Shown: positions 39,860-58,222, counted from the stretch's first letter. The stretch is 60,585 bases of DNA from Chiloscyllium plagiosum (GCF_004010195.1 NC_057721.1:44781240-44841824), one strand, 5' to 3'. Numbers and translations: made by a program. The notes: generated by a model not told the origin, from the sequence alone.

Positions 39860-40030
39860 ACATGAAGGGGAACTTAAATTGCTATTGCACAGAAGCAGTG
39901 AATATCCTGGCACTGACCGGTTTAGTGTTGCTATTCCTTTCTGTCTGTGAGCAGCAGTGAGTGTGATGTGAGTCAGTGCGCGGTCCACCCGCACCAAGCT
40001 CGCTGCGACCTGAATTTCCTGCACAATGAC
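39860..40030 (+). promoter_or_regulatory. Candidate proximal promoter of gene B
   Basis: Non-repeat sequence just 5' of the leader ATG, with an AP-1 site TGAGTCA at 39969-75 and no clear TATA box. Confidence 0.35.
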
Positions 40031-40074
40031 CAACAGCTCCAAGTAACCAGTGAGACAGCGTCATCCTCAGGAAC

Positions 40075-40111
40075 ATGGGCTCAGGTCTCAGGCTCTGGCT
40101 CTTCCTCTTAG
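40075..40111 (+). CDS. Gene B (VJ-C1 inhibitory receptor), leader exon
   Basis: aacATGg in good Kozak context, MGSGLRLWLFLL, phase-1 donor G|GTAAGG, then a 95-bp intron. Confidence 0.85.
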
Positions 40112-40206
40112 GTAAGGCTTGCCTTTGGTTCCAGGGAGCAGTCATTGCAGTTAGACTCGGGCTCTGTGGAGTTGATGTTCCCATTTGTTGTCACATTATG
40201 TTCCAG

Positions 40207-40542
40207 GGCCTGTTGTCCCTCTGAAAGTGATTGAGTCTCCTCCAGTTCTCTCCCTCCTGAGAGGGCAGACAGCTCGGATCAACTGCAGCCTGATACCGGG
40301 AGAGGAGCGGGCAGAGCTGGTGAGATATTATTGGTGTCGGGCAAGAGACAATCCTGACTTCAGCGGAAACAGATCCTGGAATTTCCTGGAAAACAGCTCC
40401 CGTGTGTCAGTGTCAGAGAGTTTCCTCATTATCCGGGAGCTGATGGTAAATGATTCTGACACTTACCGCTGTGTGGTTCTCAGAGAGAGACCTCGGCCCT
40501 GGAAATACTTCCAGGGAAATGGAACAACACTGACCATCCAAG
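40207..40542 (+). CDS. Gene B germline-joined VJ-type IgV exon
   Basis: Acceptor ttccAG| and donor AG|GTAATT, both phase 1. LKVIESPPVLSLLRGQTARINCSL...YYW...LIIRELMVNDSDTYRCVVLRERPRPWKYFQGNGTTLTIQ has the V-set core plus a J-like GxGTxLxI in the same exon. Confidence 0.93.
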
Positions 40543-40587
40543 GTAATTGTGGAAGATCCGAAATATTCAGCAGGAAGGGCTGCATCT

Positions 40588-40606
40588 AGAGAGAGAGAGA
40601 GAGAGA
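40588..40606 (+). repeat. (AG)n microsatellite
   Basis: Seen directly in the sequence. Confidence 0.9.
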
Positions 40607-40988
40607 AACAGGTCATGGCTCAGGTTGGTCAGAACTGGAAGAAGTTGGAGGTTTAATAGTTGAACAGTTTATCAAAGTCGTTTATCTGAGCCGTGCCCAG
40701 AGACAGCCTGACCTGCTGAGTGTTCCCAGAATCCGCAATGTTTTGCTGCTGATGCAGTGTCTGGACAGAATAGACAGGGAGAGTCTATCCCCATCTCCCA
40801 AACCAAGCGGTACAGAGTTACACTGAATATCCTCAGAAATAGAGGCCACATATGGGCTCGGTTTTACCCGCACTGCCCCGGACTGGGACAGAGACAGATT
40901 TCATCATGAATTTCAAAAGAGAATGGGACAACATTCTGAAGAGAAACATTTCTCAGGGTTTCCGAATAAGGACACGATGGGCCAAATG

Positions 40989-41174
40989 TCAAGGTGAGAG
41001 TGGTGCTGGAAAAGCACAGCAAGTCTGGCAGCATCCGAGGAGCAGGAGAATCGACGTTTCGGGCAAAAGCCCTTCACGTCAGGCTCACTGAAGCTCCAGC
41101 CTGACCTGATGTGTTTTTCCAGCACCACTCTAATCTTGACTCTGACCTCCAGCATCTGCAGTCCTCACTTTCGC
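40989..41174. mobile_element. Fold-back PLE insertion, 16-bp TSD
   Basis: CACGATGGGCCAAATG at 40973 and 41175. Confidence 0.85.
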
Positions 41175-41824
41175 CACGATGGGCCAAATGGCCTGGTTCT
41201 GTGCAGTGAGCTTTCTCTGAGAAGATGAAGGGAGAGTGAAATAACTCAATGTGTGAGAGAAGGAAACAGAAACAGTGCTTAGAATCACAGAGATAGAGCC
41301 CAGACTGGGATGTTGTGTGGGAGCACAGGGTCTGCCCGGGGTTTACCTTTAATCTCACATTAACCACCCACCAGCAGCACCTGCTTTTCTATCGGATCCT
41401 TTTCAACATTTAGCTTGAAGAAAACCGCCCAAAGACAAAGCTCTCTAAACTGAACTCTAACAGCGAAAGATCCGATTTCCAACAAGTCAATTACCAAATA
41501 GAACGAACATGATTTTGGGAAAAATGTTTATCATTACCTGGAATATACTGCTCCAAAAAAAAACCACAACCCGAGCACGTGTCGGGACGAAACTGATTGA
41601 GGCTCCCGGGCTCTCATTCTAACCCACATTGTTAGGAGGGGTCTGTTCTCCTTGGGTCGGTGATTTGGTAATCGGGGTACAATTTATTAAACCCATTCTG
41701 CACTGTCCCATTGAGTATCCAAGTTTCACGCTGTTTTAATCATCCCTCTCCTTGCTACCTGTCGATTTCTATTTGCTACAATGAAGATTGACACAATGTG
41801 TGTTGTTTTGATGTGTTTATTTAG

Positions 41825-42124
41825 CGAAACCTGAAATCTATCTGACTGCGGATCCCCAGAATGAAGGTGTTGGGATTCAGACACTGACTTGTTTGGCTGC
41901 GGGATTTTTCCCGAGGGGTCTGACCATTTCCTGGATTGTTGAGGGGGATGTCTCCTATCAGGAGGAGCCGGGCTCGCTGACAGTAAACACGGACAGCAGT
42001 TACAACCTGAGCTCCCGGCTGCGGATTGCAAGGCCCCAGCGGGAGCAGGGAGCCACCGTCTCCTGTCACATTCAGCACAGGACCTTCACTGGGTCAGTGA
42101 GGACAAGGCTCAGAGACAGTCCAG
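41825..42124 (+). CDS. Gene B C1-set Ig exon
   Basis: Acceptor ttttAG| and donor AG|GTAGGT, both phase 1. KPEIYL...TLTCLAAGFFPRGLTISW...NTDSSYNLSSRL...VSCHIQH carries the C1-set signatures CLxxGFxP, W, NxDxxYxxxSxL and CxxxH. Confidence 0.93.
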
Positions 42125-42680
42125 GTAGGTGCCTCACTAATACTGACCACACCACAGTACTCCCAGTTACAGCCAAGGGACTGGAAAATTAACAATTCCA
42201 TTATAAAACACGCAGTATTGGAGATGGAATAACGGGAAAGAGTCCTTTATTCGTTTACGGGATGTGGATGTCTGACCATTAATTGCCCATGGCTAATTGT
42301 CCATAGGACAGTTAAGAGTCAGCCGCTTTGCTGTAGGTCTGGAGTCACATGTAGGTCAGACCAGGTAAGAATAACACTTTCCCTCCCGAAAGGCCATTAC
42401 ATAGGGATTTCCTACAATCGGTACATGCTCATTAGACTCTTAATTCCAGATTTTGTTTTTCTTGAATTCAAATTCCACCAACTGCCCAGGCAGGATTCGA
42501 ATCCCGGGTCATTACCTGGCTCTCTCGATTAGCAGCCCTATGCAGTGCAGTATGTTAGCCGTATAGCAAAAAAAGAAGGCACTCTAAATTCCATTAAAAT
42601 TAACACAACGCTAACGCTGAATTTATTGGTAGTTATCGGAAATAATGATGTGAATGGAAATTGGCAAAAACAGCCCATCG

Positions 42681-42862
42681 CTGAAAATGTGTTGCTGGAA
42701 AAGCGCAGCAGGTCAGGCAGCATCCAGGGAACAGGAGAATCGACGTTTCGGGCATAAGCCCTTCTTCTTTCAGCATCCCTGGATGCTGACTGACCTGCTG
42801 CGCTTTTCCAGCAACACATTTTCAGCTCTGATCTCCAGCATCTGCAGACCTCACTTTCTCCT
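42681..42862. mobile_element. Fold-back PLE insertion, 16-bp TSD
   Basis: CAAAAACAGCCCATCG at 42665 and 42863. Confidence 0.85.
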
Positions 42863-42949
42863 CAAAAACAGCCCATCGGCTGGGGAGCCGGAGTTGGAAA
42901 TCTCAAACATTGACCTTTCGCGTTGCACATCGTAACCGCCCTAGAATCG

Positions 42950-43530
42950 ATTTGGAGATGCCGGTGTTGGACTGGGGTGTACAAAGTTAAAAATCACACA
43001 ACACCAGGTCTTTCATCGGACAACCACCTGATGATGGAGCAGCGCTCCGAAAGCTTGGCTTCCAAGTAAACCTGTTGGACTATAACTTGGTGTGGTGATT
43101 TTTAACTCTGCTCTCGAATTAACTTCCAACATTTCTTTTTATGGACTTTAATTCAGTCGAACAGGTGGGTTCGCTTCAGTCGCTCTGTTAGAGCACACAA
43201 TAACCTTGAGAAACATTAAAAACAGAAGGCGATTCCGAGCTAGTTTCAACCCTTTGTTTTCACACCGAGCGGTGTCAGAGCTCCTTTCGAAGCCACATTT
43301 CCAGTGCGGAATCGCTCCCTGCTTCCACACCAGGCGGCTCAGTGAAACGTCAAAAATCACACAACACCAGGTTATAGCCAACAGGTTTAATTGGAAGCAC
43401 TAGCTTTCGGAGTGACTACCACCTGAGAAGGAGCGTCGCTCCGAAAGCTAGTGTGCCAATAGTGTGCTATAACCTGGTGTTGAGTGATTTTTAACTTTGT
43501 CCACCCCAGTCCACCACCGGCATCTCCAAA
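42950..43530. mobile_element. Two fold-back PLE insertions (about 42950-43107 and 43353-43530)
   Basis: AAAATCACACAACACCAGG hairpins. The second has a TSD TCAGTGAAA(C/T)GTCA at 43339 and 43531. Confidence 0.8.
43028..43055 (+). ncRNA. Minimal hammerhead ribozyme core (PLE-associated)
   Basis: CTGATGA-t-GGAGC-agc-GCTCC-GAAA-GCT. Confidence 0.65.
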
Positions 43531-46500
43531 TCAGTGAAATGTCAGCATTGACTGAAGAGTAATTCTGGCTTCAGGAATGAAGAGAAAAGGAGCCGCTGGA
43601 TACAGAACAGGCAGCGTTTATACAGCACAAACCAGAGGGGGAATTACAACTCTGTAACAGATGTCAGCAGTTCCACATTGACCCAGTTCATTCAGCAGGA
43701 CCGCTGCGATGCTGACAGAGTGACCATGACTTCAGGCCAGACAGGAATACAGAGGAAAGGCGGGAATTACAGGGAAATGGGAGAACGTTCCATCAAACTA
43801 TCACGGCGACACAAGCAGTGGGCCGAATGGCCTCCTCCTGCGCTCCCATTTATGATTCCCTTCAACAGCCATATGCCATTTAGCCGGTTGGCAGGTTCCC
43901 AGAGCGTGTGAATAGAATGAACCTGTTATATTCTCTGGGCGATAGGCTATTGACATCATCCCGCCGCTTCACTCTGTTCTAGGTGTGTACAGGCAGTGAT
44001 CACAGCTCCTATTACACCACTGTCACTGGACGGGTGGAGATTAGACCATCTATAAATCCCCACTCACATGGGTTTCTTTGGTTCATTACCACAGACCGGT
44101 TGGGATTTTAGATGCAGGATCGTAGCCACAAGAAAAGGAAACCCGTTCAGTCCATACCCACAGTGTCGCTCCTATTCCTGCTCATTAAAGCTCAGGCAGT
44201 AAGCTTATCACCCGGATTCCCAAACTTCACCTTTTTGAAAAAAGACTGAGAGAAAGAAATATCCCTGGCCATGATCTTGATATTTAAGGGAACGATTGTC
44301 AAAGAAACAGCGAGGGGATAGATTGAAAACGTACAAATGGAGCTACGATCCATCAGCACCTTTGAAAACCGCTATGAGCCAAATACTAATGAGGGTCGGC
44401 GCATTGGATTTGCATGTCAGGCAGAAGCTTGGAACAGGGAATTCATGACCAATTTAAAACTCTTGGAGAATGAGTGTGCCGGGCCTAGCTATAGACTGGC
44501 ACTAGTTGGTTGTGGCACAATGTGTTTTTGGTGTACACCAAGGCAACAGTGTCATCCTCGCTCAGCAGACTACAGAATGCACCACTCCAGAACCAAAATG
44601 CTGGAAATCTGATATGAATGTAGAAAATGCTGGCAATTTCTGAAGATGAGGTAGCGTCTCTGGAAAGGGATTCCAACATTGCAGGTGGTGATCTTTCATC
44701 AGAACACTAATGAGAGCCATCATTCTCTAATGAGAGAGCAGGACTATAGGGCCTTATTTGGGAATAGAAGTTTGGAGAGGAGGAATTATAAAATGCATTA
44801 ATATGGGCTGTAGTAAATTATTCCCTCTTGGAGGCTGCCTGGATGGTTTCTGTCTCCACAGTATGCAGTTTGAAACCAATCTTGTTAAAAAATTGCTATT
44901 TTGTGCTGCCATTAAAATAACTGCCAGATCAAAAAGACTAAAAAAAGCTGATCAACAAAAAAAAAGCAGATATGTTGGTCCTAAATGTATGTCACTTGTC
45001 ATGAAGTTGCAAGACTGTGTTGGTTAGGGAAGTGGCTTGTCCTAATAATCTGTAGCTCTATCAATCACGTACAAATAAACAGTAACAGGGATGATTTAGA
45101 AATTACAGAAGATGGATGTGAAGCCTGAAGGCATGAACTTTATTTTCAACAATATTTACCCAGCGCCTTTATTTCACTAAACTACTTGAAGCACCTCCCA
45201 AAAGTATTATCAGTCAAAATGTAACACTGAATCACATCTAAAAAAATCAAATTTAATACATCATACCACCAACCTATTCTCTTTCCAAATCCAGGCAATT
45301 CTGTAACGGAAGCAATTAACATTCAGAAATAAAAATTATTGGTATTTCACAGTAAGTAATACCCTTATAATCTCACAGAGGCCACAACTGCTTAGTGAGA
45401 GAAGGGGTCTTTGTGTTTTGTGAAGTACCGATCATACATGCTCCAAATACCTTTTCATGAAAATACAAATGTAAACATCAGTATTTTTGCAGCTTATTTG
45501 TCATAAGTAACTTTGTTGGGAGGAACCATAAAATAAACACACCTAGAAATGTGACTATCAGAAACTTCAAAAAGCCTTTCTTAGTTGATCACCTCCTGTT
45601 TGGATCTCATAAAGAATTAAATAATTAATCTTTTGATCCTAGTTCTGTCTTTTAATTGTATTGGTTTCGACTGTCTCCAATTTCAACTTTCAAATTAAAT
45701 GATCAATTATATTGGCAATGTCCAATATAAGTCAACTAGTTTTAAGTTTTCTTTTTGAACACAACTGGCCGTTAATAATAGTAACTGTCAGCTTGAAACA
45801 TTAATAGTTACCATGTCTGTATTGAAAACAAAATATTACAAATCATTTTTAAAAAGGCAGCATTGGTAACAGTACAGCTGTATTTCAACAAGTGTATTAG
45901 ATGAGTTCTGAAAAAGGGTCACTGGACCCATAATGTTAACTCTGATTCCTCTCCACAAATGCTGCCAGACCTGTTGGGTTTTTCCAGCAATTTCTATTTT
46001 TGTTTCTGATTTCCAACATCTGCAGTTCCTTCGTATGCTTTTTAATTGGAGGAGGGATTGGGAAGAAAAGTAATGGAGGCACATCATGAAGTAAGTTTGA
46101 AATTGCCAATAATTTAAATAGGGTGCTCAATTTACATGGTCCACTTCCAGCCTGTGTAACTGCAGTGGAAAAAGAGGAATGGGTTCAGTAAAGGTTGCTA
46201 AACATCAGTTTTCTGCATGCAAATATACATGGATGATTTGTTTATTTGTATCTCACCTTGGAAAACTTGTTAGTGGTCACGAAGAGTTTAGAGAATGGAA
46301 GTTTAGCAGGCTGACAGTTTTAAAAGTTATTTTTACTTAATCTGTATAGCTATTCAGTGAAAATTGAAAATACTGTAAGAATATCTCTTAGGCTGTTGTG
46401 CATAACTATTTTCACAATACATTAAAGGGTAACATTTCCCCTTTACCTCAGTGACATGATTCTATATGCTGATACAGTGAGATGTGACTTCCCTTCAGGC

Positions 46501-46744
46501 AGTGACAAAACCACTCATGAATAGCATGACTGTAATGATAAAGACCCAATGATAGTATGGAGCTTGTCCTTCAATAAATAAATAATTTCTACACTTTTTG
46601 AGGAAATTTTAGTAGAAATGGGATAATGCATGTAATATTACTGTTACACAACTGGAACTAATTTTGGCATCATTCCTTCATGGCATTCTATTGGATGAAA
46701 CCTATTTATCCATTTCACACAGACAAGTCAATTCAAAAACTTCG

Positions 46745-46880
46745 AAGTTAAAGATCACACAACACCAGGTTATAGTCCAACAGGTTTAATTGGAAGCATT
46801 AGCTTTCGGAGTGCCGTTCCTTCATCAGGTGGTTGTGGAGGACACAGTTGTAAGGCACAGAATTTATAGCAAAGAGTTTA
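46745..46880 (-). mobile_element. PLE terminal-repeat fragment with a decayed hammerhead core
   Basis: Reverse complement reads CTGATGA-a-GGAACGGCACTCC-GAAAGCT. Confidence 0.7.
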
Positions 46881-47052
46881 TATCAAAAAATTCAAGTGAC
46901 AGATAATAAGTATATTTCTGATTTAACATGTAGGTTAGAGAATATAATTGAACATTTGAATTTCAAAGTATTGCATATTGTGTAGCCATTCTTGATCTTA
47001 TTTGTAATTAATTATTATTAATGGCTTGAATTGTTTCAATTGTGATTTGAAG

Positions 47053-47157
47053 GTTTTTCTAAGTATTATTACCTCGGCCTGCTGAGTCTTATCCTTATTG
47101 TACCGTTTTGTCTTTGGATCACAAAGAGTCAATGCTATAAACAGAAGAATGGAAAAG
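47053..47157 (+). CDS. Gene B transmembrane exon
   Basis: In phase 1 it reads GFSK-YYYLGLLSLILIVPFCLWIT-KSQCYKQKNGK: 20 uncharged residues, then a basic stop-transfer segment. Donor AAG|GTAATC. The acceptor (ttgaAG) is only moderate. Confidence 0.75.
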
Positions 47158-47284
47158 GTAATCAAATAAAATGCAGTCTTTTTTTTAATGGCTGAATATA
47201 TTGCATTGAAAATAGTGCATAAGTATTACATGAAATAATTCTAACAAAAATAACCATTGGAAAAATTTATATTCCACAGGCAAT

Positions 47285-49712
47285 AAGAGCTCAGGATAAC
47301 AGATAGTTAGCCATCTAGGAGAGCAGGAAAAGACAAAGTGCAGGAGTCATTGGTCCTAATGCCACTCTCAAACTGTTTGTCAGTGTCAAGATTATTTCAA
47401 GTGATGAGTTATATAACTAGAGCAGTGGAGCCAAATAGTGGAGATTGGGGAAGATAGATCAAATGATGGGAGATGTGGTAAATTTAAGGAAACTGACAAG
47501 GCAATAGCACAAGGTATTAACATGGGTAGTGATAATCAGTGTGGCAAGAAACTTAACATTTAAGATTGCATCATCAAATAAGGCCTGCTTTTGCGTAAAA
47601 GGCAGAACTAAAAGCTCTGTATCTGAATGCATTCATAACAAAATGTCATACAGGAAGAAATATGTATGATTTGATAGCAATTACAGAGATACGACCACAG
47701 CATGAGCAAGACTAGGACCTATATATTAAAAGCTTCAAGATACTTCAAAAGGACAGGAAGCTCAGAAAAGGTGTTGAGGTAACTGTGTTAATTAAAAACG
47801 AATTTAGTACACAGTAAAAAGATAACATTTGCACTAAAGGTGCAGAATCAGCTTTGGTCTAAATAATAGACAGTAAATGTAAGAAGTGCCTTGTGGAAGT
47901 ATTTTACAGATCATAATAACTGTACTGTAGGATAGAATATACTTGAATATAATGGGGAATTCTGCAAAAGTTATCAGCATAATCAAAGATGATTTAAATC
48001 TACACAGAGATTGAATTAATGAAATTGGCAAGGCAGCGTGGAATATCAGTTCATGTAATGGTCTCAGGGCAGTTTCATAGAGCTGCATGTTCTAGAGTCA
48101 ACCAGAGAGAAAAGTTATTCAAGAACTCATAAGGTGCAATGACAGAAGACTGACTATTGTTCTGATTGTAAACAAGGCTCCAGGAAGCCAAGGTCAAAAC
48201 ATGATAAAATTTTGTTTGCATTTTGAGGATGACCAAAGTGGGTTGAAGACTAATGTTTGAAACTTAAATCAAGGCAATTGCAAAAGTGTGAAAGCGGTAC
48301 TGGCCAGATTGAATTGAGAGATTACGTTAAAGGATAGGACAACATCGATGCAGTGGTAGACATTTAATACATCTTTCATCATTATCAGCAAAGATACATT
48401 TCAGTGAGAAAGCATTTTGGAGAAGAATGAAAAATCTGTGTACCAGTAAGGAAGTTTAAGATAATATTAAATTGAAAGAAAAAGTGCACAATACTACAAA
48501 GATTAGTCCTAAGTCAGAGTTATTAACAATATAATTAGTGACATGGTTGTGGAAAGTGAATGCACTAAAGCCAAGTTCGTTGATGACACAAAAATAGGTG
48601 GGAAGGCAAATGGTGAGGAAAACACAAAGAGTCTGCAAAGGAATATAGACAGGCTAGGCAAGTGGGTGAGAAGTTGGTTAATGGAATATAATGTGCATAA
48701 ATGTGAGGTTATCAAATTTTGCAAGAGGAACAGATGAGCTGAATAATATTTAAATGGTTAAGAACTGTAGAAAGTTATGGAACAGAGGGATTTGAGAGTT
48801 CTTGTCCATGAATCACAGAAAGCTACCACTCAAGTTGAGCAGGTAACAGGGAAGACAAGTGAAATTTTGGCCTCTAGTTTAAAGGGGATGGAGAATAAAT
48901 ATAGGGAGATTTAGCTAAAATTATGCAAGGCACGAGACAGATCACAGATTGAATGTTGTGAACAGTTTTGGTTCCCTTATCTATGGAAAGATGTACTGGC
49001 TTAGGGGGCAGTTCAGGGAAAGTTCACTAGGCTGATATCAAGTATGAAGGGACTATGTTATGTAGTGAAGATGAATAGTTTGTGCCTGTACTCATTGGAA
49101 TATAGAAGAATGTGAGATAACCTTAATGAAACATATACATTCTTAGGAGACTTGACAGGGTAGATGCAAGAAGAGTGTTTCGCCTTTTGGGAGAGTCTAG
49201 AACCAGAGGGTATGATCTCAGGATAACGGATCACACAGATAGATCAGAGATGCGGAGACATTTCTTCTCTCAGTGGGTAATGAGGCTGTAGAATTCTTTG
49301 CCACAGTGGAATATCGAGGCTATATATACTCAAGGCTGTGACAGGCAGGCTTTTAATTAATAAAGGAAGTGAGGGAAGTGTGAGGAAAGTAGATTTGAGA
49401 GTTATCAGAAAAGTCATGATCTCATTGAATGGCCTGCTTCTGTTCCTATGTCTTATGATTTTATTATCTAAATTGAGACGGAATTCTAAAACAAAGAATG
49501 ACAAAAAAAAACTGGATGAATTTAGAATATGAGAGAAAGCTAAGTAAAAATATAAAAACAAATCGTAAGACTTTCTACCAGAATTTGAAAAGGGAAAGCG
49601 GAAAGTGAGCATGTTCCACTGGCAGGGGGAAGAATGCGGAAAAAATGGGAACTAATGAAATGATTGGAAGGGTGAACCAACATTTTGTGTATGTTTTCAA
49701 TGGAGAAGGCAC
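47285..49712 (+). mobile_element. Degenerate CR1 LINE(s) running up to the assembly gap
   Basis: AKFVDDTKIGG and MEYNVHKCEV motifs. Confidence 0.8.
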
Positions 49713-50212
49713 NNNNNNNNNNNNNNNNNNNNNNNNNNNNNNNNNNNNNNNNNNNNNNNNNNNNNNNNNNNNNNNNNNNNNNNNNNNNNNNNNNNNNNNN
49801 NNNNNNNNNNNNNNNNNNNNNNNNNNNNNNNNNNNNNNNNNNNNNNNNNNNNNNNNNNNNNNNNNNNNNNNNNNNNNNNNNNNNNNNNNNNNNNNNNNNN
49901 NNNNNNNNNNNNNNNNNNNNNNNNNNNNNNNNNNNNNNNNNNNNNNNNNNNNNNNNNNNNNNNNNNNNNNNNNNNNNNNNNNNNNNNNNNNNNNNNNNNN
50001 NNNNNNNNNNNNNNNNNNNNNNNNNNNNNNNNNNNNNNNNNNNNNNNNNNNNNNNNNNNNNNNNNNNNNNNNNNNNNNNNNNNNNNNNNNNNNNNNNNNN
50101 NNNNNNNNNNNNNNNNNNNNNNNNNNNNNNNNNNNNNNNNNNNNNNNNNNNNNNNNNNNNNNNNNNNNNNNNNNNNNNNNNNNNNNNNNNNNNNNNNNNN
50201 NNNNNNNNNNNN
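49713..50212. other. Assembly gap (N run)
   Basis: Run of N. Confidence 1.
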
Positions 50213-50659
50213 AAACTCATACCTCCTGATTCAGAGGGAGAGACACCACCACTGCACCGTTAGAGTCCTTAATCACAATTAAAGGCTGAGTCAACAGAGT
50301 AATTTAAAAGGTTAACTAATCTTGCTTACTTACAAGATCAATTCAGACACATTTTTCTTAAGTTTCACAGAATTTGTTAAGCTTATCAAGACATAGATAA
50401 AAGTAACGTTACTCAACAAAAGCAGCATTGTCAATCAATTGCTTACTGCCTGTGATCTGTCTCCTTTGGTTCAAGCTCTTACCTCAAAGCATTTTCACAT
50501 TTGTTATGCTGCATTTAAATAAGCTTGGACCCTTAAACAACAACAAAAACCAGAAAGCATTGATCTTACCTTGACTGGGACATAGGAATATTCTTATGTT
50601 TTGCAAAAGTATTTTTACAGATAGCCATATCAAATAGAATATAATTTCATTCCTGACTT

Positions 50660-53600
50660 AGAGTCATAGAATCATAGAGATGTACAGCATGGAAACAGAT
50701 CCTTTGGTTCAAATCGTCCATGCCGACCAGATATCTGAACTTAATCCAGTCCCATTTGCTAGCACTTGGTACATATCTGTCTAAACCCTTGCTATTTATA
50801 TTCCCACACAGATACCTTTTAAATGTTGCAATTGCACCAGCCTCCTCTGGCAGTTTGTTCCATACATACAATACCCTTTGCCCCTTCAGTCCCTTTTAAA
50901 TCTATGCCCTCTAGTTCTGGACTCCCGCACCCCACGGAGAAGACGTTGTCTCTTTAGCCTGTCCATGCTCCTCATGAGTTTATAAACCTCTATAAGATCA
51001 GCCCTCAGTCTCCAGCGCTCCAGGGAAAACAGCACAAAACCATGTTGACTATCCCTAATCAGTCCTTGCCTTTCCAAATACATGTACTTCCTGTCCCTCA
51101 GGATTCCCTCCAACAACTTGTCCACCACTGATGTCATGCTCACTGGTCTATAACTCCCTGGGGTTTCTTAACACCTTTCTTAAAAAATGGCACCATGTTA
51201 GCCCATCTCCAGTCTTCCGGCACCTCACCTGTGACTATTGATGATATAAATATATCAGCAATGGGTCCAGTAATCACCTCCCTAGCTTTCCACAGAGTTC
51301 GAGGGTACACCTGATCTGGTCCTAGGGATTTATCCACCTTTATGCCATCCAGCACCTCCTCTTCTGTAATATAGACACTTTTCAAGATGTCACCATCTAT
51401 TTCCCCACATTCTATATCTTCCACGTCCTTCTCCACAGTGAACACTGATGCAAACTACTTGTTTATTATCTCTCCCATCTCCTGTGGTTCCACAAATAGG
51501 CCACCTTGCTGGTCTTTGAAGGGTCTTATTCTCTCCCTAGATTCCTTCTTATCCTTAATGTATTTATAAAACCCCTTTGGATTCTCTTAACCAATGTGGG
51601 CGGCACGGTGGCACAGTGGTTAGCACTGGGTGGGTTTCGCTTCGGCGGGTCGGTGTGGACTTGTTGGGCCGAAGGGCCTGTTTCCACACTGTAATGTAAT
51701 CTAATAATCTAATCTAACCCTATTTGCCAAAGTTATCTCCACTTTTTGCCCTCCTGATTTCCCTCTTAAGTATACTCCTGCTGCCTTTATATTCTTCTAA
51801 GGATTCACACGATCTCTCCTGCCTATACCTAATATATGCTTCCTTCTTTTTCTGAACCAAAACATCTATTTTTCTAGTCATCCAGCATTCCCTACACCTA
51901 CCAGCCTTTCCTTTCACCCTAACAGGAATATATTTTCTCTGGACTCTTGTTATCTCATTTTCGAAGGCTTCCCATTTTCCAGCCGTCCCTTTACCTGCGA
52001 ACATCTGCCCCCAATCAACTTTTAAAAGTTCTTGCCTAATGCTGTCAAAATTAGCCTTCCTCCAATTTAGAACTTTAACTTTTAGATCTGGTCTATCCTT
52101 TTCCATCACTATTTTAAAACTAATAGAATTATGGGTCGCTGGCCCCAAAGTGCTCCCCCACTGTCACCTCAGTCACCTGCCCTGCCTTATTTCCCAAAAG
52201 TAGGTCAAGCTTTGCACCTTCTCTAGCTGATATATCCACATACTGAATCAGAAATTTTCTTGTACATACCTCACAAATTCCTCTCCATCTAAACCTTTAA
52301 CACTGTGGCAGTCCCAGTCTATGTATGGAAAGTTAAAATCCCTGCCATAACCACCCTAATATTCTTATAGATAACTGAGATTTACAAATTTGTTTTTCAA
52401 TTTTCTGTTGATTATTGGGGGGGGGGTCTATAATACAATCCAAATAGGGTGATCATCCCATTCTTATTTCTCAGTTCCACCCAAATAATCTTCCTGGACG
52501 TTTGCTAGGAATATCCTCCCTAAGTACAGCCACAACCCTCATCAAAAATGCCATTCACTCATATCTCTCGCCACACCTTCTATTCTTCCTATAGCATTTG
52601 TCTTCTGGAACATTAAGCTACCAGTCCTGTTCATCCCGGAGCCACGTCTCTGTAATTGCTATGGTATTCCAGTCCCATTTTCCTAACCATGCCCCGAGTT
52701 CATCTGCTTTCCCCTGTTAGGCTTCTTGCATTGAAATAAATGCAGATTAATTTATCAGTCCTACCTTGTTAGATTAGATTTTTAGATTAGATTACCGACT
52801 TTTAGATTACCGACAGTGTGGAAACAGGCCCTTCGGCCCAACAAGTCCACACTGACCCTCCGAAGAGCAACCCACCCAGACCCATTTCCCTAAATGATGC
52901 ACCTAACACTATGGGCAATTTAGTATGGCCAATTCACCTAACCTGCACATCTTTGGACTGTGGGAGGAAACCGCAGCACCCGGAGAATATGCAAACTCCA
53001 CACAGACAGTTACCCAAGGCAGGAATTGAACCCAGGTCCCTGGCGATGTGAGGCAGCAGTGCTAACCATTGAGCCACTGTGCTGCCTCATGTTCTCTGCT
53101 TTGTCTCTGCCTACCGACTGTTTGACTCGCTCCTTTTCCCAACTGTACCTGTCTCAGACTGATCTCTTTCCTCACTATTTCTCTGGGTCCCACACCCCCC
53201 ACCTTACTAGTTTAATTCCTTCCAAGCAGCTCTTGCAAATCTCCCTGTCAGTATGTTAGTCCACTTCCAATTCAGGTGCAATCTGTCCTTCTTATACAAG
53301 TCACTTCTACCCTAGAAGAGATTCCAATGATTCAAAAATGTGAACCTTTCTCCCCTGCACCAGCTCCTCAGGCACACATTGATCTGCTCTATCCTTCTAT
53401 TCCTACCCACACTGGCTTGTACCACCATGAATAATTCAGATATTACTATCCTTGAGGACCTTTTTAAATTCCTGCCTAACTTCTTATATTCAGAATCTCA
53501 CCCTTTGTCCTTCCTATGTCATTAGTTCCAATGTATACAACGACCTCCTGCTGGTCCCTCTCCCCTTTGAGTATATTCTGCACTCTGTCCAAGATAGCCT

Positions 53601-54480
53601 TGATCCTGGCACCAGGGAGACAACACACCGTTCTGATTTCTCGCTATCGGTTGCAGAAACATCTGTCTGTGCCTCTGACTAAAGAGTCCCCCATCACAAT
53701 TGATCTCGTGAAAGCTGACGTACCCCTAATTACATTAGAGCCAGTCTTGGTACCAGAAACATGGCTGTTCGTGCTACATTCCCCAAAGAGTCCATCACTC
53801 CACATGTTTTCCAAAACAGCGTATCTGTTTGAGAAGCTGATAACAGCAGGAGACTCCTGCATGACCTGCCTCCCTCTCCTACCTTTCCTGGAGGTAACCC
53901 ATTTACCTGACTGTATCTGCAGTTTTTCTCCCTTCCTATAAGCCACATCCATCACACCCCCTAGCTCCTGTAAATTCCTCATTGCCTCTAACTGCCAGTC
54001 CAACTGATCCATGTAATCTGACAGGATTCACAAACAAAGATATAATAATCATACATACATAAGAATCAGTAATATGGAAATTTTCCCTAATCTCCCACAT
54101 CCAACAGGAAGAGCACATCATTCTACTAAAGGCCATCTTTTTACCTTAACAATCGACAGACCCAGAAAATAGCACAGACTTACTGCTCTAAAAAACACTG
54201 CTCCAAGATAACTCAGTATAAATGTTTTATATTTTCAAATATTAATCAAGAGACAGAGCTCAATAAAATAAATAATCAAAAAGGAGCCACTTCACTCACT
54301 ATTGCAGATTTACAAAAAAAAGACAGCTTGCTTACATTTACCATGCACTTAGCTGCTCCTATGCTGTGAGCTCTCCCACACAGATTCCTCTAAGGTTAGC
54401 TGTGATTTTGCTATTAGTTAATTTTACTTTGATTCACTCCGACGTCCAGAGATACTTGAACTCAAACAGCAAAGGCAGTA
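50660..54480 (-). mobile_element. Long CR1 LINE (ORF1, EN, partial RT, 3' tail) with two HE1 SINE insertions (about 51598-51716 + and 52770-53085 -)
   Basis: ORF1: CSSCWMWE, SNRYAVL, IVMGDSLVRGTDR. ORF2: LNWRKANFD, DKSLGPDQVYPR. Confidence 0.9.
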
Positions 54481-54728
54481 GCTGTGCAGTTCACTGCTGT
54501 GTCAGACAGCAGTGTAGGTTTCTTTCTTTCTCACGTTTTCACTGACCTTGCGGTCTCTACCTTTGTCTGTCTTCCTCCTTTTTCAAGTGCTGTTGTGTTG
54601 ATCTTTGTTTTCCCAAATTTCCAAAACAATGCAACAGCTTATAAAACAGTATCAAACCATAAATTGAAATGTCCTCATTTTTAATTCATCTTGTGCTCTT
54701 ATTTCTGTTTCTTGTTCCTATGTTGCAG

Positions 54729-54980
54729 GATAATATTTCTCTGAGCAGTGAAACTCTTCATTATGCATCTGTTCATGTCAAAACTCTTCCAAAGAGGAAA
54801 CAAAAACAGCAATTGAAAAGACCAGAGCAGGACCAGGCAACAGAATATGCCGTTCTAAAGGTCAAAGATAAAAATAATCAATTCTACAGAGATGACTCAG
54901 TTGCCAGCATTTGCCCCACATCAAACATAACGCAAACTGCTAACTACATAGGAACCACATATGCTTCTCTTAAGAAATGA
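54729..54980 (+). CDS. Gene B terminal cytoplasmic exon with ITIM/ITSM-like motifs
   Basis: Long polypyrimidine tract then tgcAG|. Reads DNISLSSETLHYASV...QATEYAVL...GTTYASLKK-TGA. AATAAA lies downstream at 55563. The exon is phase 0, so an unseen intervening exon is needed. Confidence 0.8.
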   Translation, partial: DNISLSSETLHYASVHVKTLPKRKQKQQLKRPEQDQATEYAVLKVKDKNNQFYRDDSVASICPTSNITQTANYIGTTYASLKK

Positions 54981-57386
54981 ACATTTCATATCATTTCAGA
55001 TCATTCATTTTCTCAAGGGCAATTAAGGATGCCAACAAATTGCTTAGCTTGTCAGCAACTCTAATGTCTTCCAAAGTGTGATTTGGGTGGGGAATGGTTT
55101 TGCAATTGCAAATGCATAAACAAATGTATTTTTAAAGTGGTTCCTGTGCCTCAAGTTGGACGTTGACATTCATTCTTCCTTTAGACTGAAATTAAATCAA
55201 CTATTAATCACTTAAATGGTTTGGGTATATCGTAAACAGTATGTCACAGAGTTCATAGAGATCAAACTTAAGATGACTGCTGTAATGCCTTTTGATGGTT
55301 AATTATTCCACAAACCTGTCAATTATGCTGCAATTCCCTGTATGGGTCCTTCCATTCTCCTGTTTGTATCATAAAAATTTTGGAACTTCAGACCCTTAAG
55401 GGCCCATTGTTTTATCAAAGGGTTAATTCAATGTTAAATTCCCCCCCTTGTAATTGGTGTTGAGGTAGCATACCAGCCTTTCTACTTGTTGGCTGCCAGT
55501 GAATTAAAAGGCAAGCCATCTGATGTCTGGGAGCTATTGTGTGAATTTCTGTGTCAATTTTAAATAAAAGGTCAGATTAGCCTTATTAAAGAAGTAAATA
55601 AATTTATAATTGCTTGGTCATGGTAACTTGTGAGAAAAAGATTAATGTTCCTCCATGGTTCATGGTTTCCTCTTTATCTTTGGATGATTCAGCCTTTCTG
55701 CAGAGGCTGCATACCTGTGCCAACTCCCAGTGATGGCCCCCGCAGCCCAGGCATTGCCTCAACTGGTCCCTCAGTTACAAGGAAAGTGGCCACAATCTTC
55801 ACAGAAAGGAAGCCAGAGATACAAATCAGTTGTGACCCCTTCCTCTGGGGTAAGAAGATGCGCACAATGTAGGTCTGTCTGAAAACAGAGCTGACTGGAT
55901 TGGGTCAATCAATAAGTGGGTCACTGTGGTCTGTTATATTGCATGTGGGTATTAGGTTTGACTCAAAATAAATGAATTCACTCTTTGTTTCAAAGGTATG
56001 CATGACTTCTAAAACATTATGCAAAACACCTTAAGTTTGTAAACCAACCAGTGGCTCTGACTGGTGACAGTGGAGGCTGCAGCCAGCAATCCAGCTATAT
56101 GATGATACGATTACATAAGTTTGACTGCACAATTGTCTCTCCAATGCCAGTAACTGTGTGAGATATCAATTGCCTCAACACCCATCTCTCCACTTGATGA
56201 CTTCTTTTTCAATGCAAGCAATGAGACTTTTCAGCCAGTTCAAGCAATTCAAATAAAATCCCAGCCTGTTGAATCTTATTTATTCATCATGCCACACTCA
56301 TTAGAGATGATTACTGAAGGTTTCGGATACCCAGGCACATCCCACAAAATTACATTGTGTCTAAAGTTGGGCCTTTTAACAGGGAAAAAAAACAGAAGTT
56401 TTTGGAAAGCTAAGCAGTCTGACAGCATCTGTCGAGAGAAATCAGAGTTAACATTTCTTTTGCAGCTCTTTGGGTTTTTATTTCGCCTTTTACTAGGATA
56501 TCAATGAGCAGGATTGCTGAATGAGTAGATGTGTGTCTGGTTTACCAGCTGTGTCCTTTGCTGTGTTTTACGATATAGCAGAGGGCAAAAATGGAAGAAG
56601 GCTTTTCAGCTGTGCCATTCGGCAGTTATTTTGTTTGCTCACCCACCTTAGTTACATCCTGTTTCAGGATGGGAAAATGCCAGCCTTGTTCTCTACTTTA
56701 CCCTTTATATCTTAACCATCCAATATCGGCTCTGGTCTCCTTCCCAACCTTCAATCCATCATCATCCAGAACCAACTTGACTCTGGTATGGATCTGCCTA
56801 AATTTATAGGCCACAGATCATATATTATTGTGTTAAAAAATAAAAGCTTGCATGACTTGGAGGAAATGAGAGGCCAAATTAATTTAGAACTATCTGTGGT
56901 CAGATTTTGATCATGCATTTCAGCAGAGCCATACTAACCGCGCAAGATAAACTTTCCATTCAGACTATGACTAAGGTCATATCATGGTAAAAGCTCATGT
57001 CAAGGAATGAATTAATCATGAGCAAGATTGATTACAGCAAAAACATATCCTCTGAGTAATGCTGACCCTTCACAGAGCAAACTAAAAAAAAAGTGACAAA
57101 CTGCTCAATACACACAACAATTCTTTTTAGCTTTTGGTATGTTTAACAGCCAGTTATCTTGATGGTGAAAGATAGACTAGGAGAAAGTGAGGACTGCAGA
57201 TGCTGGACATCAGAAAAATGTGTTGCTGGAAAAGTGCAGCAGGTCAGGCAGCATCCAAGGAGCAAGAGAATCGACATTTTGGGCATGAGCCCTTCTTCAG
57301 GAAGGTGTGCCAAGCAGGCTAAGATAAAAGGTAGGGAGGAGGGACTTGGGGGAGGGGTGTTGGGAATGCGATAGGTGGAAGGAGTT

Positions 57387-58222
57387 NNNNNNNNNNNNNN
57401 NNNNNNNNNNNNNNNNNNNNNNNNNNNNNNNNNNNNNNNNNNNNNNNNNNNNNNNNNNNNNNNNNNNNNNNNNNNNNNNNNNNNNNNNNNNNNNNNNNNN
57501 NNNNNNNNNNNNNNNNNNNNNNNNNNNNNNNNNNNNNNNNNNNNNNNNNNNNNNNNNNNNNNNNNNNNNNNNNNNNNNNNNNNNNNNNNNNNNNNNNNNN
57601 NNNNNNNNNNNNNNNNNNNNNNNNNNNNNNNNNNNNNNNNNNNNNNNNNNNNNNNNNNNNNNNNNNNNNNNNNNNNNNNNNNNNNNNNNNNNNNNNNNNN
57701 NNNNNNNNNNNNNNNNNNNNNNNNNNNNNNNNNNNNNNNNNNNNNNNNNNNNNNNNNNNNNNNNNNNNNNNNNNNNNNNNNNNNNNNNNNNNNNNNNNNN
57801 NNNNNNNNNNNNNNNNNNNNNNNNNNNNNNNNNNNNNNNNNNNNNNNNNNNNNNNNNNNNNNNNNNNNNNNNNNNNNNNNNNNNNNNNNNNNNNNNNNNN
57901 NNNNNNNNNNNNNNNNNNNNNNNNNNNNNNNNNNNNNNNNNNNNNNNNNNNNNNNNNNNNNNNNNNNNNNNNNNNNNNNNNNNNNNNNNNNNNNNNNNNN
58001 NNNNNNNNNNNNNNNNNNNNNNNNNNNNNNNNNNNNNNNNNNNNNNNNNNNNNNNNNNNNNNNNNNNNNNNNNNNNNNNNNNNNNNNNNNNNNNNNNNNN
58101 NNNNNNNNNNNNNNNNNNNNNNNNNNNNNNNNNNNNNNNNNNNNNNNNNNNNNNNNNNNNNNNNNNNNNNNNNNNNNNNNNNNNNNNNNNNNNNNNNNNN
58201 NNNNNNNNNNNNNNNNNNNNNN
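57387..58222. other. Assembly gap (N run)
   Basis: Run of N. Confidence 1.

What the first reader, a model, noticed from the sequence alone, without database searches (positions are those of the whole stretch)
40075..54980. Non-rearranging antigen-receptor-like VJ-C1 receptor with an ITIM/ITSM tail
Seen: a short leader with a 95-bp intron, one exon holding V plus a J-like GNGTTLTI and no RSS, a true C1-set exon, an uncharged TM, and a tail with LHYASV (ITIM), TEYAVL and TTYASL (ITSM-like). The first two tyrosines are 28 aa apart. Known: C1-set domains are largely limited to Ig/TCR, MHC/B2M, tapasin, SIRP and some B7 proteins. Germline VJ-C1 genes (PRARP/VJC1-type) are discussed as remnants of the antigen-receptor precursor, and tandem ITIM+ITSM motifs recruit SHP-1/2 in PD-1 and SIRPa. 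Inference: a TCR-chain-shaped ectodomain wired to a PD-1/SIRPa-type inhibitory tail. I do not recognise it as a named gene.
Basis: partly seen in the sequence, partly recalled or inferred. Interest (0 to 1): 0.9.

Follow-up and report, generated by a model that had tools for sequence, protein, structure and literature searches.

The report
Shark SIRP-like VJ-C1 inhibitory receptor
This is a real, conserved shark gene for a cell-surface immune receptor built much like mammalian SIRP-alpha (one variable-type and one constant-type antibody-like domain, a membrane anchor and a tail with braking-signal motifs); it is useful for immune evolution but of a known kind, and one small exon is missing from the readable sequence.

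Summary
- Leader, 40075-40111.
- A 95-bp intron.
- One V exon with a germline J-like GNGTTLTI and no RSS, 40207-40542.
- A C1-set exon, 41825-42124.
- A tail exon, 54729-54980, with LHYASV, TEYAVL and TTYASL. The first two tyrosines are 28 residues apart.

I located the uncharged TM exon at 47053-47157. Spliced RNA contigs from two studies join C1 to TM.

One thing was missed. Exon 4 ends in phase 1 and the tail exon starts in phase 0. Orthologues carry a 20-codon exon between them, and it is nowhere in the readable window. It probably lies in the N gap at 49713-50212, which I did not fill.

The gene is not unknown. Homologues were found in 13 elasmobranch species. In 10 of them one predicted protein joins C1, TM and this tail (nine with a complete V domain). 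NCBI's automatic names include "SIRP-alpha-like" and "SIRP-beta-1-like". The closest solved structure to the Hemiscyllium orthologue is human SIRP-alpha. The similarity runs co-linearly from the FG loop and J motif into domain 2.

My reading is a two-domain, SIRP-like, non-rearranging inhibitory receptor that sits next to a B7-H3/H4-like gene. It is a new member of a known kind.

The scan has noted similar VJ-C1 genes elsewhere in this genome. Those notes are unchecked.

The parts
40075..40111 (+). Exon 1: start codon and leader (12 codons plus 1 base, phase 1)
   Evidence: Sequence read. Donor TCTTAG|gtaaggct. 12 of 13 residues match the N-terminus of P0061.
40112..40206 (+). Intron 1, 95 bp, gt...ag
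40207..40542 (+). Exon 2: V-set domain with a germline-joined J-like G strand, phase 1 to 1
   Evidence: Pfam V-set 1.5e-8, 35.3 bits. 90% identical to Hemiscyllium P0061. Best PDB hits are shark VNAR (2.1e-5) and TCR-alpha V.
40515..40538 (+). J-like motif GNGTTLTI inside the V exon
   Evidence: Translation. No RSS heptamer or nonamer in 39901-42300.
41825..42124 (+). Exon 3: C1-set domain, phase 1 to 1
   Evidence: Pfam C1-set 7.7e-13, 49 bits. 93% identical to P0061. RNA contigs of X1, X2 and X3 cover it (table 8).
47053..47157 (+). Exon 4: short stalk, uncharged transmembrane helix and basic stop-transfer, phase 1 to 1
   Evidence: tblastn 97% to P0061. Borders ttgaag|GTTTTT and GAAAAG|gtaatc. 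Contigs X1-record 1 and X2-record 8 join it directly to exon 3 (table 8).
49713..50212 (.). Assembly gap (N) in the intron between exon 4 and the tail exon. Probable, unproven hiding place of the missing ~59-nt exon 5.
   Evidence: N run listed. Exon 5 of the orthologues is absent from all readable sequence. Not filled and not looked up.
54729..54980 (+). Last coding exon: cytoplasmic tail (83 codons plus stop), starts in phase 0
   Evidence: Acceptor ttgcag|GATAAT. 92% identical to the P0061 tail.
54756..54773 (+). LHYASV, fits the ITIM consensus
   Evidence: The tyrosine is conserved in 11 of 11 family tails.
54840..54857 (+). TEYAVL, ITSM-like (T at -2, L at +3), 28 residues after the first tyrosine
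   Evidence: Spacing is 28 in 8 of 8 orthologues where both motifs fit the pattern.
54954..54971 (+). TTYASL, C-terminal ITSM/ITIM-like motif
   Evidence: Kept in 5 shark orthologues; the tyrosine is lost in rays.
55597..55602 (+). AATAAA, candidate polyadenylation signal of the 3' UTR (another at 55967)
   Evidence: Contig X1-record 1 runs 957 nt past exon 4. That equals 59 + 898 nt and would end at 55626, 24 nt after this signal. This is inference only.

Best explanation
This is a single-copy, non-rearranging gene for a type I membrane IgSF receptor of an orectolobiform (bamboo/epaulette-type) shark. Its parts, in order, are leader, V domain with germline J strand, one C1-set domain, a very short stalk, an uncharged TM, and a roughly 100-residue tail.

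It belongs to an elasmobranch-wide family that is most similar to SIRP-alpha in its ectodomain. Its tail carries tyrosine motifs of the kind SIRP-alpha uses, but no solved SIRP tail was available to compare. The family has one C1 domain where SIRPs have two.

Likely mechanism (inferred, not shown):
1. The V domain binds a cell-surface ligand.
2. Src-family kinases phosphorylate the conserved LxYASV tyrosine and the TEYAVL tyrosine 28 residues further on.
3. The pair docks the tandem SH2 domains of SHP-1/SHP-2-type phosphatases.
4. This damps activation of the leukocyte that carries the receptor.

Skipping the in-frame TM exon would give a soluble form.

Shown: gene anatomy, domain identities, conservation, C1-to-TM splicing, absence of an RSS.
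Inferred: inhibitory signalling, ligand, cell type, and that the missing exon 5 lies in the gap.
For: - Anatomy and splice phases.
- Domain identities: Pfam V-set and C1-set are both above their cut-offs.
- Family search: scoring the V exon against 1.84 billion representatives gave 47 hits at E<=1e-3. The top four are elasmobranch V-C1 proteins: three have the TM and two the full tail, and the Pristis and Hypanus rows are short isoforms whose longer forms carry the tail.
- Named relatives occur in 13 elasmobranch species.
- Hemiscyllium P0061 matches the five readable exons at 92 (leader), 90 (V), 93 (C1), 97 (TM) and 92 (tail) %.
- Per-exon trees place the window with Hemiscyllium and Stegostoma (support 100/99 for V, 96/97 for C1). 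Rays form one clade in the C1 tree (100/100).
- Tail conservation: both leading tyrosines are present in 11 of 11 tails. Spacing is 28 in 8 of 8. The tail is as conserved as the ectodomain: against Scyliorhinus it is 61%, versus 62% for V and 61% for C1.
- RNA: contigs X1-record 1 (1439 nt) and X2-record 8 (1691 nt), from two studies, join 42122|47051. That is the exon 3-4 splice, allowing for the shared AG. They continue 957 and 1284 nt beyond exon 4.
- SIRP likeness: 2wng is the top PDB hit for P0061 (6.3e-20). Its 45-bit co-linear stretch covers query 85-215 against SIRP-alpha 75-207. SIRP-gamma is fourth. The two nearest ESM Atlas feature clusters are SIRP-alpha clusters, at 0.96.
- SIRP-alpha's V plus two C1 layout and its recruitment of SHP-1/2 through ITIMs: passages of PMC12975943.
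Against: - The reading frame is not closed in this assembly. Exon 5 is absent from all readable sequence, so this copy could be defective.
- The RNA run labelled with the same organism code as the DNA holders (X8) has zero depth on exons 3 and 4. The spliced contigs come from organisms coded A and B. A differs at 5 positions; B differs at 0 to 1.
- The V-to-C1 and TM-to-tail junctions were not seen in reads, because the V and tail exons lay outside the 5.6 kb I could lay.
- No phosphorylation, SHP binding, ligand or expression pattern was tested.
- TEYAVL and TTYASL are not canonical ITSMs.
- The V exon alone hits shark VNAR and TCR-alpha best. SIRP D1 is not among the 60 rows shown of 316 matches.
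Confidence: 0.75

Rival explanations
1. It is simply the shark orthologue of SIRP-alpha (the SIRP family proper), binds CD47, and is therefore an already characterised receptor under another label.
For: - NCBI names.
- SIRP-alpha is the best solved match, with a co-linear alignment from V into domain 2.
- The nearest ESM Atlas clusters are SIRP-alpha clusters.
- The tail has multiple YxxV/I/L motifs. The SIRP-alpha motif sequences are recalled, not tested.
Against: - Sharks have one C1 exon. No second C1-like exon appears anywhere in the window at E<1e-3.
- The two C1 domains of rays are 91-92% identical tandem copies, a recent lineage-specific duplication.
- The only other gene in the window is a B7-H3/H4-like gene. 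This is not what I recall of the human SIRP cluster at 20p13, but synteny was not tested.
- The C1 is only 24-28% identical to a rodent SIRP-beta-like protein.
- The V exon alone does not bring up SIRP D1 in its best 60 hits.
Confidence: 0.2
2. In this genome the copy is a pseudogene or a truncated, tail-less variant. Exon 5 has been lost, so exon 4 splices to the tail exon out of frame and the protein ends right after the TM.
For: Exon 5 is not found in any readable part of the window. A direct join reads Gly then stop. The same-label RNA run X8 shows no cover of exons 3-4.
Against: - All five readable exons are open and have canonical splice sites.
- The tail exon is 92% identical to Hemiscyllium with no stop or frameshift. 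That would be unexpected if it were untranslated.
- A 500-N gap sits exactly in the intron where the exon belongs.
- Organism B contigs, which are 0 to 1 letter different from the window, are spliced at the exon 3 borders.
Confidence: 0.1
3. The tail does not inhibit. The tyrosine motifs act as a switch or activating module (SAP/EAT-2, Grb2 or PI3K type docking), or the protein is mainly an adhesion or decoy molecule, partly secreted.
For: - Two of the three motifs have T at -2 (ITSM-like).
- TM-less isoforms are predicted in Heterodontus and Heptranchias (P0063, P0064).
- Contig X3-record 16 carries 240 nt after the exon 3 donor with no cover of the TM exon.
- Rays have paralogues or isoforms with the same ectodomain, another TM and no tyrosines (P0068, P0069).
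Against: The first motif fits the ITIM consensus and is the best conserved. From recall, the 28-residue spacing is in the range used by tandem-SH2 phosphatases in PD-1, SIRP-alpha and PECAM-1. The TM has no charged residue for an ITAM adaptor.
Confidence: 0.12
4. The tail exon at 54729 belongs to a different downstream gene and the model is mis-joined.
For: It lies 7.6 kb from exon 4, across a gap. No read in my one read-laying run covered it.
Against: In ten species one predicted protein joins C1, TM and this tail in the same order. No other Ig-like exon exists between 42138 and 60585. Contigs continue roughly 1 kb past exon 4.
Confidence: 0.03

Closest known systems
SIRP-alpha (SHPS-1/CD172a) and the SIRP family
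   Same: - A V domain with a J-like strand in one exon, followed by a C1-set domain, a single TM and a tail with several YxxV/I/L motifs.
- Best solved match: 2wng, 6.3e-20. The 45-bit stretch covers the FG loop, the J motif and domain 2.
- A paired short-tail form exists in rays, as SIRP-beta and SIRP-gamma do in mammals (passages of PMC12975943).
   Different: - One C1 domain where SIRPs have two.
- Very short stalk.
- Neighbour is a B7-H3/H4-like gene.
- CD47 binding is unknown.
- Orthology is not shown.
UrIg / UrIg2 (shark non-rearranging VJ-C1 'antibody' genes)
   Same: Elasmobranch, germline VJ exon plus C1-type domains. UrIg2 (9dmx) is the second or third best PDB match. These genes are discussed as relics of the antigen-receptor precursor (passages of PMC12227049, and PMC10751288).
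   Different: The solved UrIg2 chain is titled V-C1-C2-C3, its N-terminal domains form homodimers, and the paper calls it an antibody gene. This gene has one C domain, a TM and a signalling tail. The co-linear score is lower than for SIRP-alpha, 32 against 45 bits.
[quoted passage not shown] 2019)
   Same: From recall only: non-rearranging VJ plus C-domain membrane proteins with ITIM-bearing tails, proposed as antigen-receptor relics. I saw only the title, in a reference list, and one mention in PMC10751288.
   Different: Not testable here. The paper is not held and no PRARP sequence was available. An alligator VJ-C1-TM-LIYADL protein (P0071) is only 25% identical.
NKp30 (NCR3) and NKp30-like VJ receptors
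   Same: Germline VJ domain. Unchecked scan notes place NKp30-like genes on both sides of this window. The nearest V relatives outside cartilaginous fish include frog VJ-TM proteins with three-tyrosine tails in a similar layout.
   Different: NKp30 has no C1 domain and, from recall, an Arg-bearing TM. NKp30 structures are not among the best 60 hits for the V exon. Tail homology to the frog proteins is not significant: 8.9 bits against 8.1 in shuffles.
PD-1 / CD28 family
   Same: ITIM followed about 25-28 residues later by a T-x-Y motif (passages of PMC11599192).
   Different: That family has a V domain only, with no C1 and no J-C junction. It is not a member.
TCR and Ig light chains
   Same: V-J-C1 order and exon phases. 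The V exon's best PDB hits are VNAR and TCR-alpha V.
   Different: V and J are fused in the germline. There is no RSS, no interchain cysteine in the stalk, and a long signalling tail.

Membership tests
Non-rearranging VJ-C1 IgSF genes (antigen-receptor-like) | V-set domain and J-like GxGTxL strand encoded in one exon | tested here: met
   Exon 40207-40542 is open throughout and ends ...YFQGNGTTLTIQ. Pfam V-set 35.3 bits.
Non-rearranging VJ-C1 IgSF genes (antigen-receptor-like) | No recombination signal sequence | tested here: met
   No heptamer or nonamer in 39901-42300.
Non-rearranging VJ-C1 IgSF genes (antigen-receptor-like) | C1-set constant domain directly after the VJ exon | tested here: met
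   Pfam C1-set 49 bits against a cut-off of 21. Phase 1-1 exon, 1.3 kb downstream.
SIRP family | Ectodomain of one V-set plus two C1-set domains (PMC12975943, passages) | tested here: not met
   There is one C1 exon only, with no other C1-like exon in the window. Shark orthologues have one C1. The two C1 domains in rays are recent duplicates, 91-92% identical.
SIRP family | Closest sequence relationship to SIRP ectodomains | tested here: inconclusive
   SIRP-alpha is the best PDB hit for orthologue P0061, and the nearest Atlas clusters are SIRP-alpha clusters. However, the V exon alone prefers VNAR and TCR-alpha, and no tree containing real SIRPs could be built.
SIRP family | Tail ITIMs that recruit SHP-1/SHP-2 | not testable with these tools
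   The motifs are present and conserved. Binding is a bench test.
SIRP family | Conserved synteny with the SIRP locus; CD47 binding | not tested
Only a B7-H3/H4-like neighbour is visible.
ITIM/ITSM tandem (PD-1, SIRP-alpha type) | (S/I/V/L)xYxx(I/V/L) followed by TxYxx(V/I) within about 20-30 residues | tested here: inconclusive
   LHYASV fits ITIM. TEYAVL, 28 residues later, has T at -2 but L at +3, so it is ITSM-like only. The spacing is conserved in 8 of 8 orthologues.
NKp30 (NCR3) | Single VJ domain, no C domain, charged TM for an ITAM adaptor (recalled) | tested here: not met
   A C1 exon is present and the TM is uncharged.
Rearranging antigen receptors (TCR/Ig) | Separate V and J segments flanked by RSS | tested here: not met
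   V and J are contiguous in one exon with no RSS.
PRARP | Features known to me only from recall of Fu et al. 2019 | not testable with these tools
   The paper is not held. It surfaced only as a citation and one mention inside PMC10751288. No reference sequence was available.

The most novel reading that the evidence does not exclude
This family is the surviving elasmobranch branch of the lineage that gave rise to the SIRPs. It keeps the minimal V(J)-C1 layout of the antigen-receptor precursor and still sits in a B7/NKp30-type (MHC-paralogous, 1p13-like) neighbourhood. Its ligand would then be the B7-H3/H4-like protein encoded 22 kb upstream on the same strand rather than CD47. That would make a cis-linked receptor-ligand pair of the NKp30-B7H6 kind, and would point to a receptor lineage for the B7-H4 group, whose receptor in mammals I recall as unidentified.
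Probability: 0.07. Interest if true: 0.8.

Novelty: new member of a known kind. Interest (0 to 1): 0.45.

Why it matters
Germline VJ-C1 genes are the closest living models of what the RAG transposon split to create antibodies and T-cell receptors. SIRP-alpha has long been cited as one of them.

A two-domain, SIRP-like, ITIM-bearing receptor is conserved from sixgill-type sharks to rays, with weaker V-C1-TM relatives in paddlefish, sturgeon and chimaera. That pushes this receptor type back to early jawed vertebrates and gives a tractable object for three things:
- domain-wise phylogeny of C1-bearing receptors;
- testing whether inhibitory signalling through tandem-SH2 phosphatases was already wired to such ectodomains;
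- asking whether B7-like neighbours are its ligands.

Practically, the gene could be annotated in this genome as SIRP-like, with a note that one exon is unassembled.

Tried and rejected
**TM candidates rejected.** A hydrophobicity scan first suggested a 'TM' at about 49400-49500. On reading the DNA it looked to me like a common shark repeat tail. That judgement is by eye and recall. No orthologue matches it, so I rejected it. The real TM exon came from orthologue tblastn.

**Search for exon 5.** I ran tblastn with five orthologue linkers and with P0061, P0060 and P0067. I also ran ungapped scans of the whole window on both strands, and half-exon scans. Nothing rose above chance.

**Tail homology to frog VJ-TM proteins.** An HMM built from 10 elasmobranch tails gave a best of 8.9 bits among the 74 stored proteins outside the 10 used to build it (apart from family isoforms). 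The best of 1480 shuffled tails was 8.1 bits. This is inconclusive.

**Pfam DUF4578 on the tail.** It scored 22.6 bits for the window tail and 25.6, 23.2 and 22.4 bits for three of the five elasmobranch orthologues tested. All are under the 27-bit cut-off.

**ESM Atlas on the TM plus tail.** The best clusters were 'C1orf162 homolog' at 0.79 and LST1 at 0.77, under the 0.9 reliability line. These are leads only.

**Wider family searches.** The profile search and the paddlefish query reached only 20 and 5 proteins, because that tool needs shared 5-residue words. No named, characterised relative appeared. The one rodent SIRP-beta-like hit (P0075) aligns only to C1, at 24-28%.

**Repeat-like ORFs.** ORFs at 19549-20793, 50886-51445 and 51720-52148 have no Pfam family, so I make no claim about them.

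**Literature.** Searches found no paper describing this shark gene family. One search found nothing on DUF4578.
- Papers seen as passages: PMC12227049, PMC10751288, PMC11599192, PMC12975943.
- Seen only as a listing with the start of the abstract: PMC8111073.
- Not held: PMC6761025, PMC3709836, PMC10530332.
- Fu et al. 2019 (PRARP) is recalled only.
- Supplements are closed. Supplementary gene lists of PMC11599192 and PMC10751288 might name such genes, and I could not see them.

**Not done.** I built no domain-wise tree against SIRP, TCR, IgL, NKp30, tapasin or PRARP, because no reference sequences were obtainable with the remaining caps. I examined no synteny beyond the window.

Full report
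**What is there.** On the + strand the window holds a five-exon readable gene model.

| Exon | Coordinates | Content | Size and phase |
|---|---|---|---|
| 1 | 40075-40111 | ATG and leader | 37 nt |
| 2 | 40207-40542 | V domain plus J-like strand | 336 nt, phase 1-1 |
| 3 | 41825-42124 | C1-set domain | 300 nt, phase 1-1 |
| 4 | 47053-47157 | short stalk, uncharged TM, basic anchor | 105 nt, phase 1-1 |
| last | 54729-54980 | cytoplasmic tail and TGA | starts in phase 0 |

- Intron 1 is 95 bp. All readable borders are AG/GT.
- Pfam calls exon 2 V-set (35.3 bits, cut-off 26) and exon 3 C1-set (49 bits, cut-off 21).
- The J-like GNGTTLTI is in frame in the V exon. No RSS heptamer or nonamer occurs in 39901-42300.
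- The tail has LHYASV, TEYAVL and TTYASL, with 28 residues between the first two tyrosines.

I found it by tblastn with orthologues, after rejecting a repeat-derived hydrophobic stretch near 49400.

**The gap and the frame.** The N run at 49713-50212 lies in the intron between exon 4 and the tail exon and touches no readable exon.
- Exon 4 ends in phase 1 and the tail exon begins in phase 0. Joined directly they read Gly then stop.
- In the orthologues a 20-codon segment lies between them (residues 260-279 of Hemiscyllium P0061). I infer an exon of about 59 nt, phase 1 to 0.
- Its best match anywhere in the window, on either strand, is 7-8 of 20 residues. Half-exon scans give 4-5 of 10. Both are chance level.
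- The readable exons are 90-97% identical to P0061, so a present exon would have been found.
- The gap is therefore the likely place, but this is inference.

I also never joined the exons into one sequence. All searches on the window were exon by exon.

**Do the exons belong together?** Scoring the V exon against 1.84 billion representatives gave 47 proteins at E<=1e-3, with 2 at E<=1e-30.
- The four best hits are V-C1 proteins of Scyliorhinus, Pristis, Hypanus and Narcine. Three have the TM, two carry the full tail, and the Pristis and Hypanus rows are short isoforms whose longer forms carry it.
- Further searches added Mustelus, Heptranchias, Mobula (two species), Stegostoma, Hemiscyllium, Heterodontus, Cetorhinus and Hemitrygon. 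That makes 13 species.
- In 10 species a single predicted protein joins C1, TM and this tail (nine with a complete V domain). Cetorhinus is cut off after C1. Hemitrygon and Mobula hypostoma have another TM and a tyrosine-free tail.
- Hemiscyllium P0061 matches the window's leader, V, C1, TM and tail at 92, 90, 93, 97 and 92%.
- Per-exon trees put the window with Hemiscyllium and Stegostoma (100/99 for V, 96/97 for C1). Rays form one clade in the C1 tree (100/100). This is the pattern expected of orthologues.

**RNA evidence.** I had one read-laying run of at most 6 kb and used it on 41700-47300, laying four probable RNA runs from four studies and three coded organisms.
- Contigs X1-record 1 (1439 nt) and X2-record 8 (1691 nt) place exon 4 (47051-47157) directly next to exon 3 (to 42122). 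This is the exon 3-4 splice, allowing for the shared AG. They run on 957 and 1284 nt beyond exon 4.
- If exon 5 is 59 nt, the first contig would end at 55626, which is 24 nt after an AATAAA at 55597. The second would end at 55953, short of the next signal at 55967. This is consistent with the model but is no proof.
- X3-record 15 has 73 nt before the exon 3 acceptor.
- X3-record 16 has 240 nt after the exon 3 donor with no cover of the TM exon. That would fit the TM-skipped isoforms predicted in Heterodontus and Heptranchias (P0063, P0064), but I could not see those letters.
- Against: run X8, which carries the same organism code as the DNA holders, has zero depth on exons 3 and 4.
- The V-to-C1 and exon 4-to-tail junctions were outside the stretch and were not seen.
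- X1 and X2 differ from the window at five exon positions, and four of those change the amino acid.

**What it is like.**
- The V exon alone hits shark VNAR (2.1e-5) and TCR-alpha V best. Neither SIRP D1 nor NKp30 is among the 60 rows shown of 316 matches.
- The C1 exon hits Ig constant domains, UrIg2 (1.2e-17), and SIRP-alpha and SIRP-gamma (about 2e-13).
- With the whole Hemiscyllium orthologue, human SIRP-alpha (2wng) is the best of all PDB sequences, at 6.3e-20. One 45-bit stretch runs co-linearly from strand F, the FG loop and the J motif into SIRP domain 2. A second 28-bit stretch matches domain 3.
- The comparable V-C stretch scores 32 bits for UrIg2, 32 bits for SIRP-gamma and 24 bits for an Ig lambda chain.
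- The two nearest ESM Atlas feature clusters are SIRP-alpha clusters, at 0.96.

This explains NCBI's automatic names. The ectodomain is SIRP-like rather than specifically TCR-like.

It fails one defining SIRP feature, the two C1 domains (PMC12975943, passages).
- The window has one C1-like exon, and sharks have one C1 domain.
- The two C1 domains of rays are 91-92% identical tandem duplicates.

Orthology to SIRPs is unresolved.

**The tail.**
- Both leading tyrosines are present in 11 of 11 family tails. The ITIM pattern fits in 9 of 11; Mustelus and one unnamed sequence have Q at -2.
- The second motif fits in 10 of 11; Narcine has K at -2.
- The spacing is 28 in 8 of 8 proteins where both fit.
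- A third YS(T/A)V motif is present in 3 sharks. It is missing from the window and from Hemiscyllium, where the alignment shows a 3-residue gap.
- The C-terminal TxY(A/V)SL is kept in 5 shark orthologues, and its tyrosine is lost in rays.
- The tail is as conserved as the ectodomain.

From established knowledge of ITIM signalling (passages of PMC12975943) and my recall of PD-1 and PECAM-1 spacing, the likely mechanism is tyrosine phosphorylation and docking of SHP-1/2-type phosphatases. This is inferred, not shown. TEYAVL and TTYASL have L at +3, so they are only ITSM-like.

**Context.** The only other gene in the window is a B7-family gene on the same strand. Its V-like exon is at 15172-15492 and its C-like exon at 16953-17303. 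The best PDB hits are CD276/B7-H3 (1.1e-17) and VTCN1/B7-H4 (7e-15). Unchecked notes of this scan place NKp30-like VJ genes and TRIM45 just outside the window, and similar VJ-C1 genes on other pieces of this genome.

Outside elasmobranchs, the nearest V relatives are uncharacterised:
- frog and newt VJ proteins;
- other shark VJ-VJ-TM proteins;
- paddlefish and sturgeon V-C1-TM proteins with a similar YYY...VP...LWI TM;
- chimaera V-C1-TM proteins.

**Verdict.** This is a real, conserved, non-rearranging VJ-C1 receptor with an inhibitory-type tail. It is a SIRP-like gene already predicted, though not studied, in many elasmobranchs, and one small exon is unassembled here. I found no paper on it, and supplements were closed. 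I class it as a new member of a known kind, of moderate interest.

Noticed in passing
window 15172-15492 and 16953-17303 (+): A B7-family gene lies about 22 kb upstream on the same strand. The V-like exon's best PDB hits are CD276/B7-H3 (1.1e-17) and VTCN1/B7-H4 (7e-15). The C-like exon hits CD276, BTNL8 and BTN3A. It is a possible cis-linked ligand, but that is speculation.
   Followed up: partly
window 42124/47053 and 47157; proteins P0063, P0064: The TM exon is 105 nt, phase 1-1, so skipping it keeps the frame. TM-less isoforms are predicted in Heterodontus and Heptranchias. Contig X3-record 16 has 240 nt after the exon 3 donor without covering the TM exon. A soluble isoform is possible.
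   Followed up: partly
window 47157 / 54729: Skipping the unassembled exon 5 would put a stop codon two codons after exon 4. Inclusion of that small exon therefore decides whether the tyrosine-motif tail is made at all.
   Followed up: no
window 47053-47157 and 54729-54977; P0061 residues 226-362: The TM plus tail gives sub-threshold Pfam DUF4578 hits of 22-26 bits (cut-off 27), in the window tail and 3 of the 5 elasmobranch orthologues tested. Its nearest ESM Atlas clusters are 'C1orf162 homolog' (0.79) and LST1 (0.77), both under the reliability line. LST1 binds SHP1/2 and lies in the MHC class III region (abstract start of PMC8111073). Small ITIM adaptors could be ectodomain-less relatives. 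This is a lead only.
   Followed up: partly
proteins P0050, P0059, P0003 (rays): Ray orthologues carry two C1 domains that are 91-92% identical to each other. This is a recent tandem exon duplication that mimics the V-C1-C1 layout of SIRPs.
   Followed up: yes
proteins P0068, P0069 (Hemitrygon, Mobula hypostoma): These have the same V-C1 ectodomain but a different TM and a short tail without tyrosines. They could be a paired, non-inhibitory partner, as SIRP-beta and SIRP-gamma are to SIRP-alpha. Whether this is a separate gene or an isoform is unknown.
   Followed up: no
window 41851, 41864, 41918, 41946, 47122: Contigs of organism A differ from the window at five exon positions, and four of them change the amino acid (D>N, E>V, G>D, T>I). 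This hints at fast ectodomain evolution, but the numbers are too small to test.
   Followed up: partly
Hemiscyllium proteins P0061 and P0067: Hemiscyllium has two near-identical copies. They group together, apart from the window, in the C1 tree (97/87). P0067 ends after C1 without a TM. This is a recent duplication or a partial model.
   Followed up: partly
window 42635-43008, 43383-43569, 46749-46935: Intron 3 holds repeats with very high summed contig depth in all four RNA-type runs, up to about 6e5, and hundreds of spurious joints. They are probably abundant transcribed interspersed repeats.
   Followed up: no
window 19549-20793 (+), 50886-52148 (-): Long ORFs, one of 414 aa with an internal duplication visible by eye, have no Pfam family at E<=0.01. 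By eye they look transposon-derived. No claim is made.
   Followed up: partly
window 57387-58222: A second assembly gap of 836 N lies downstream of the gene. It was not examined.
   Followed up: no
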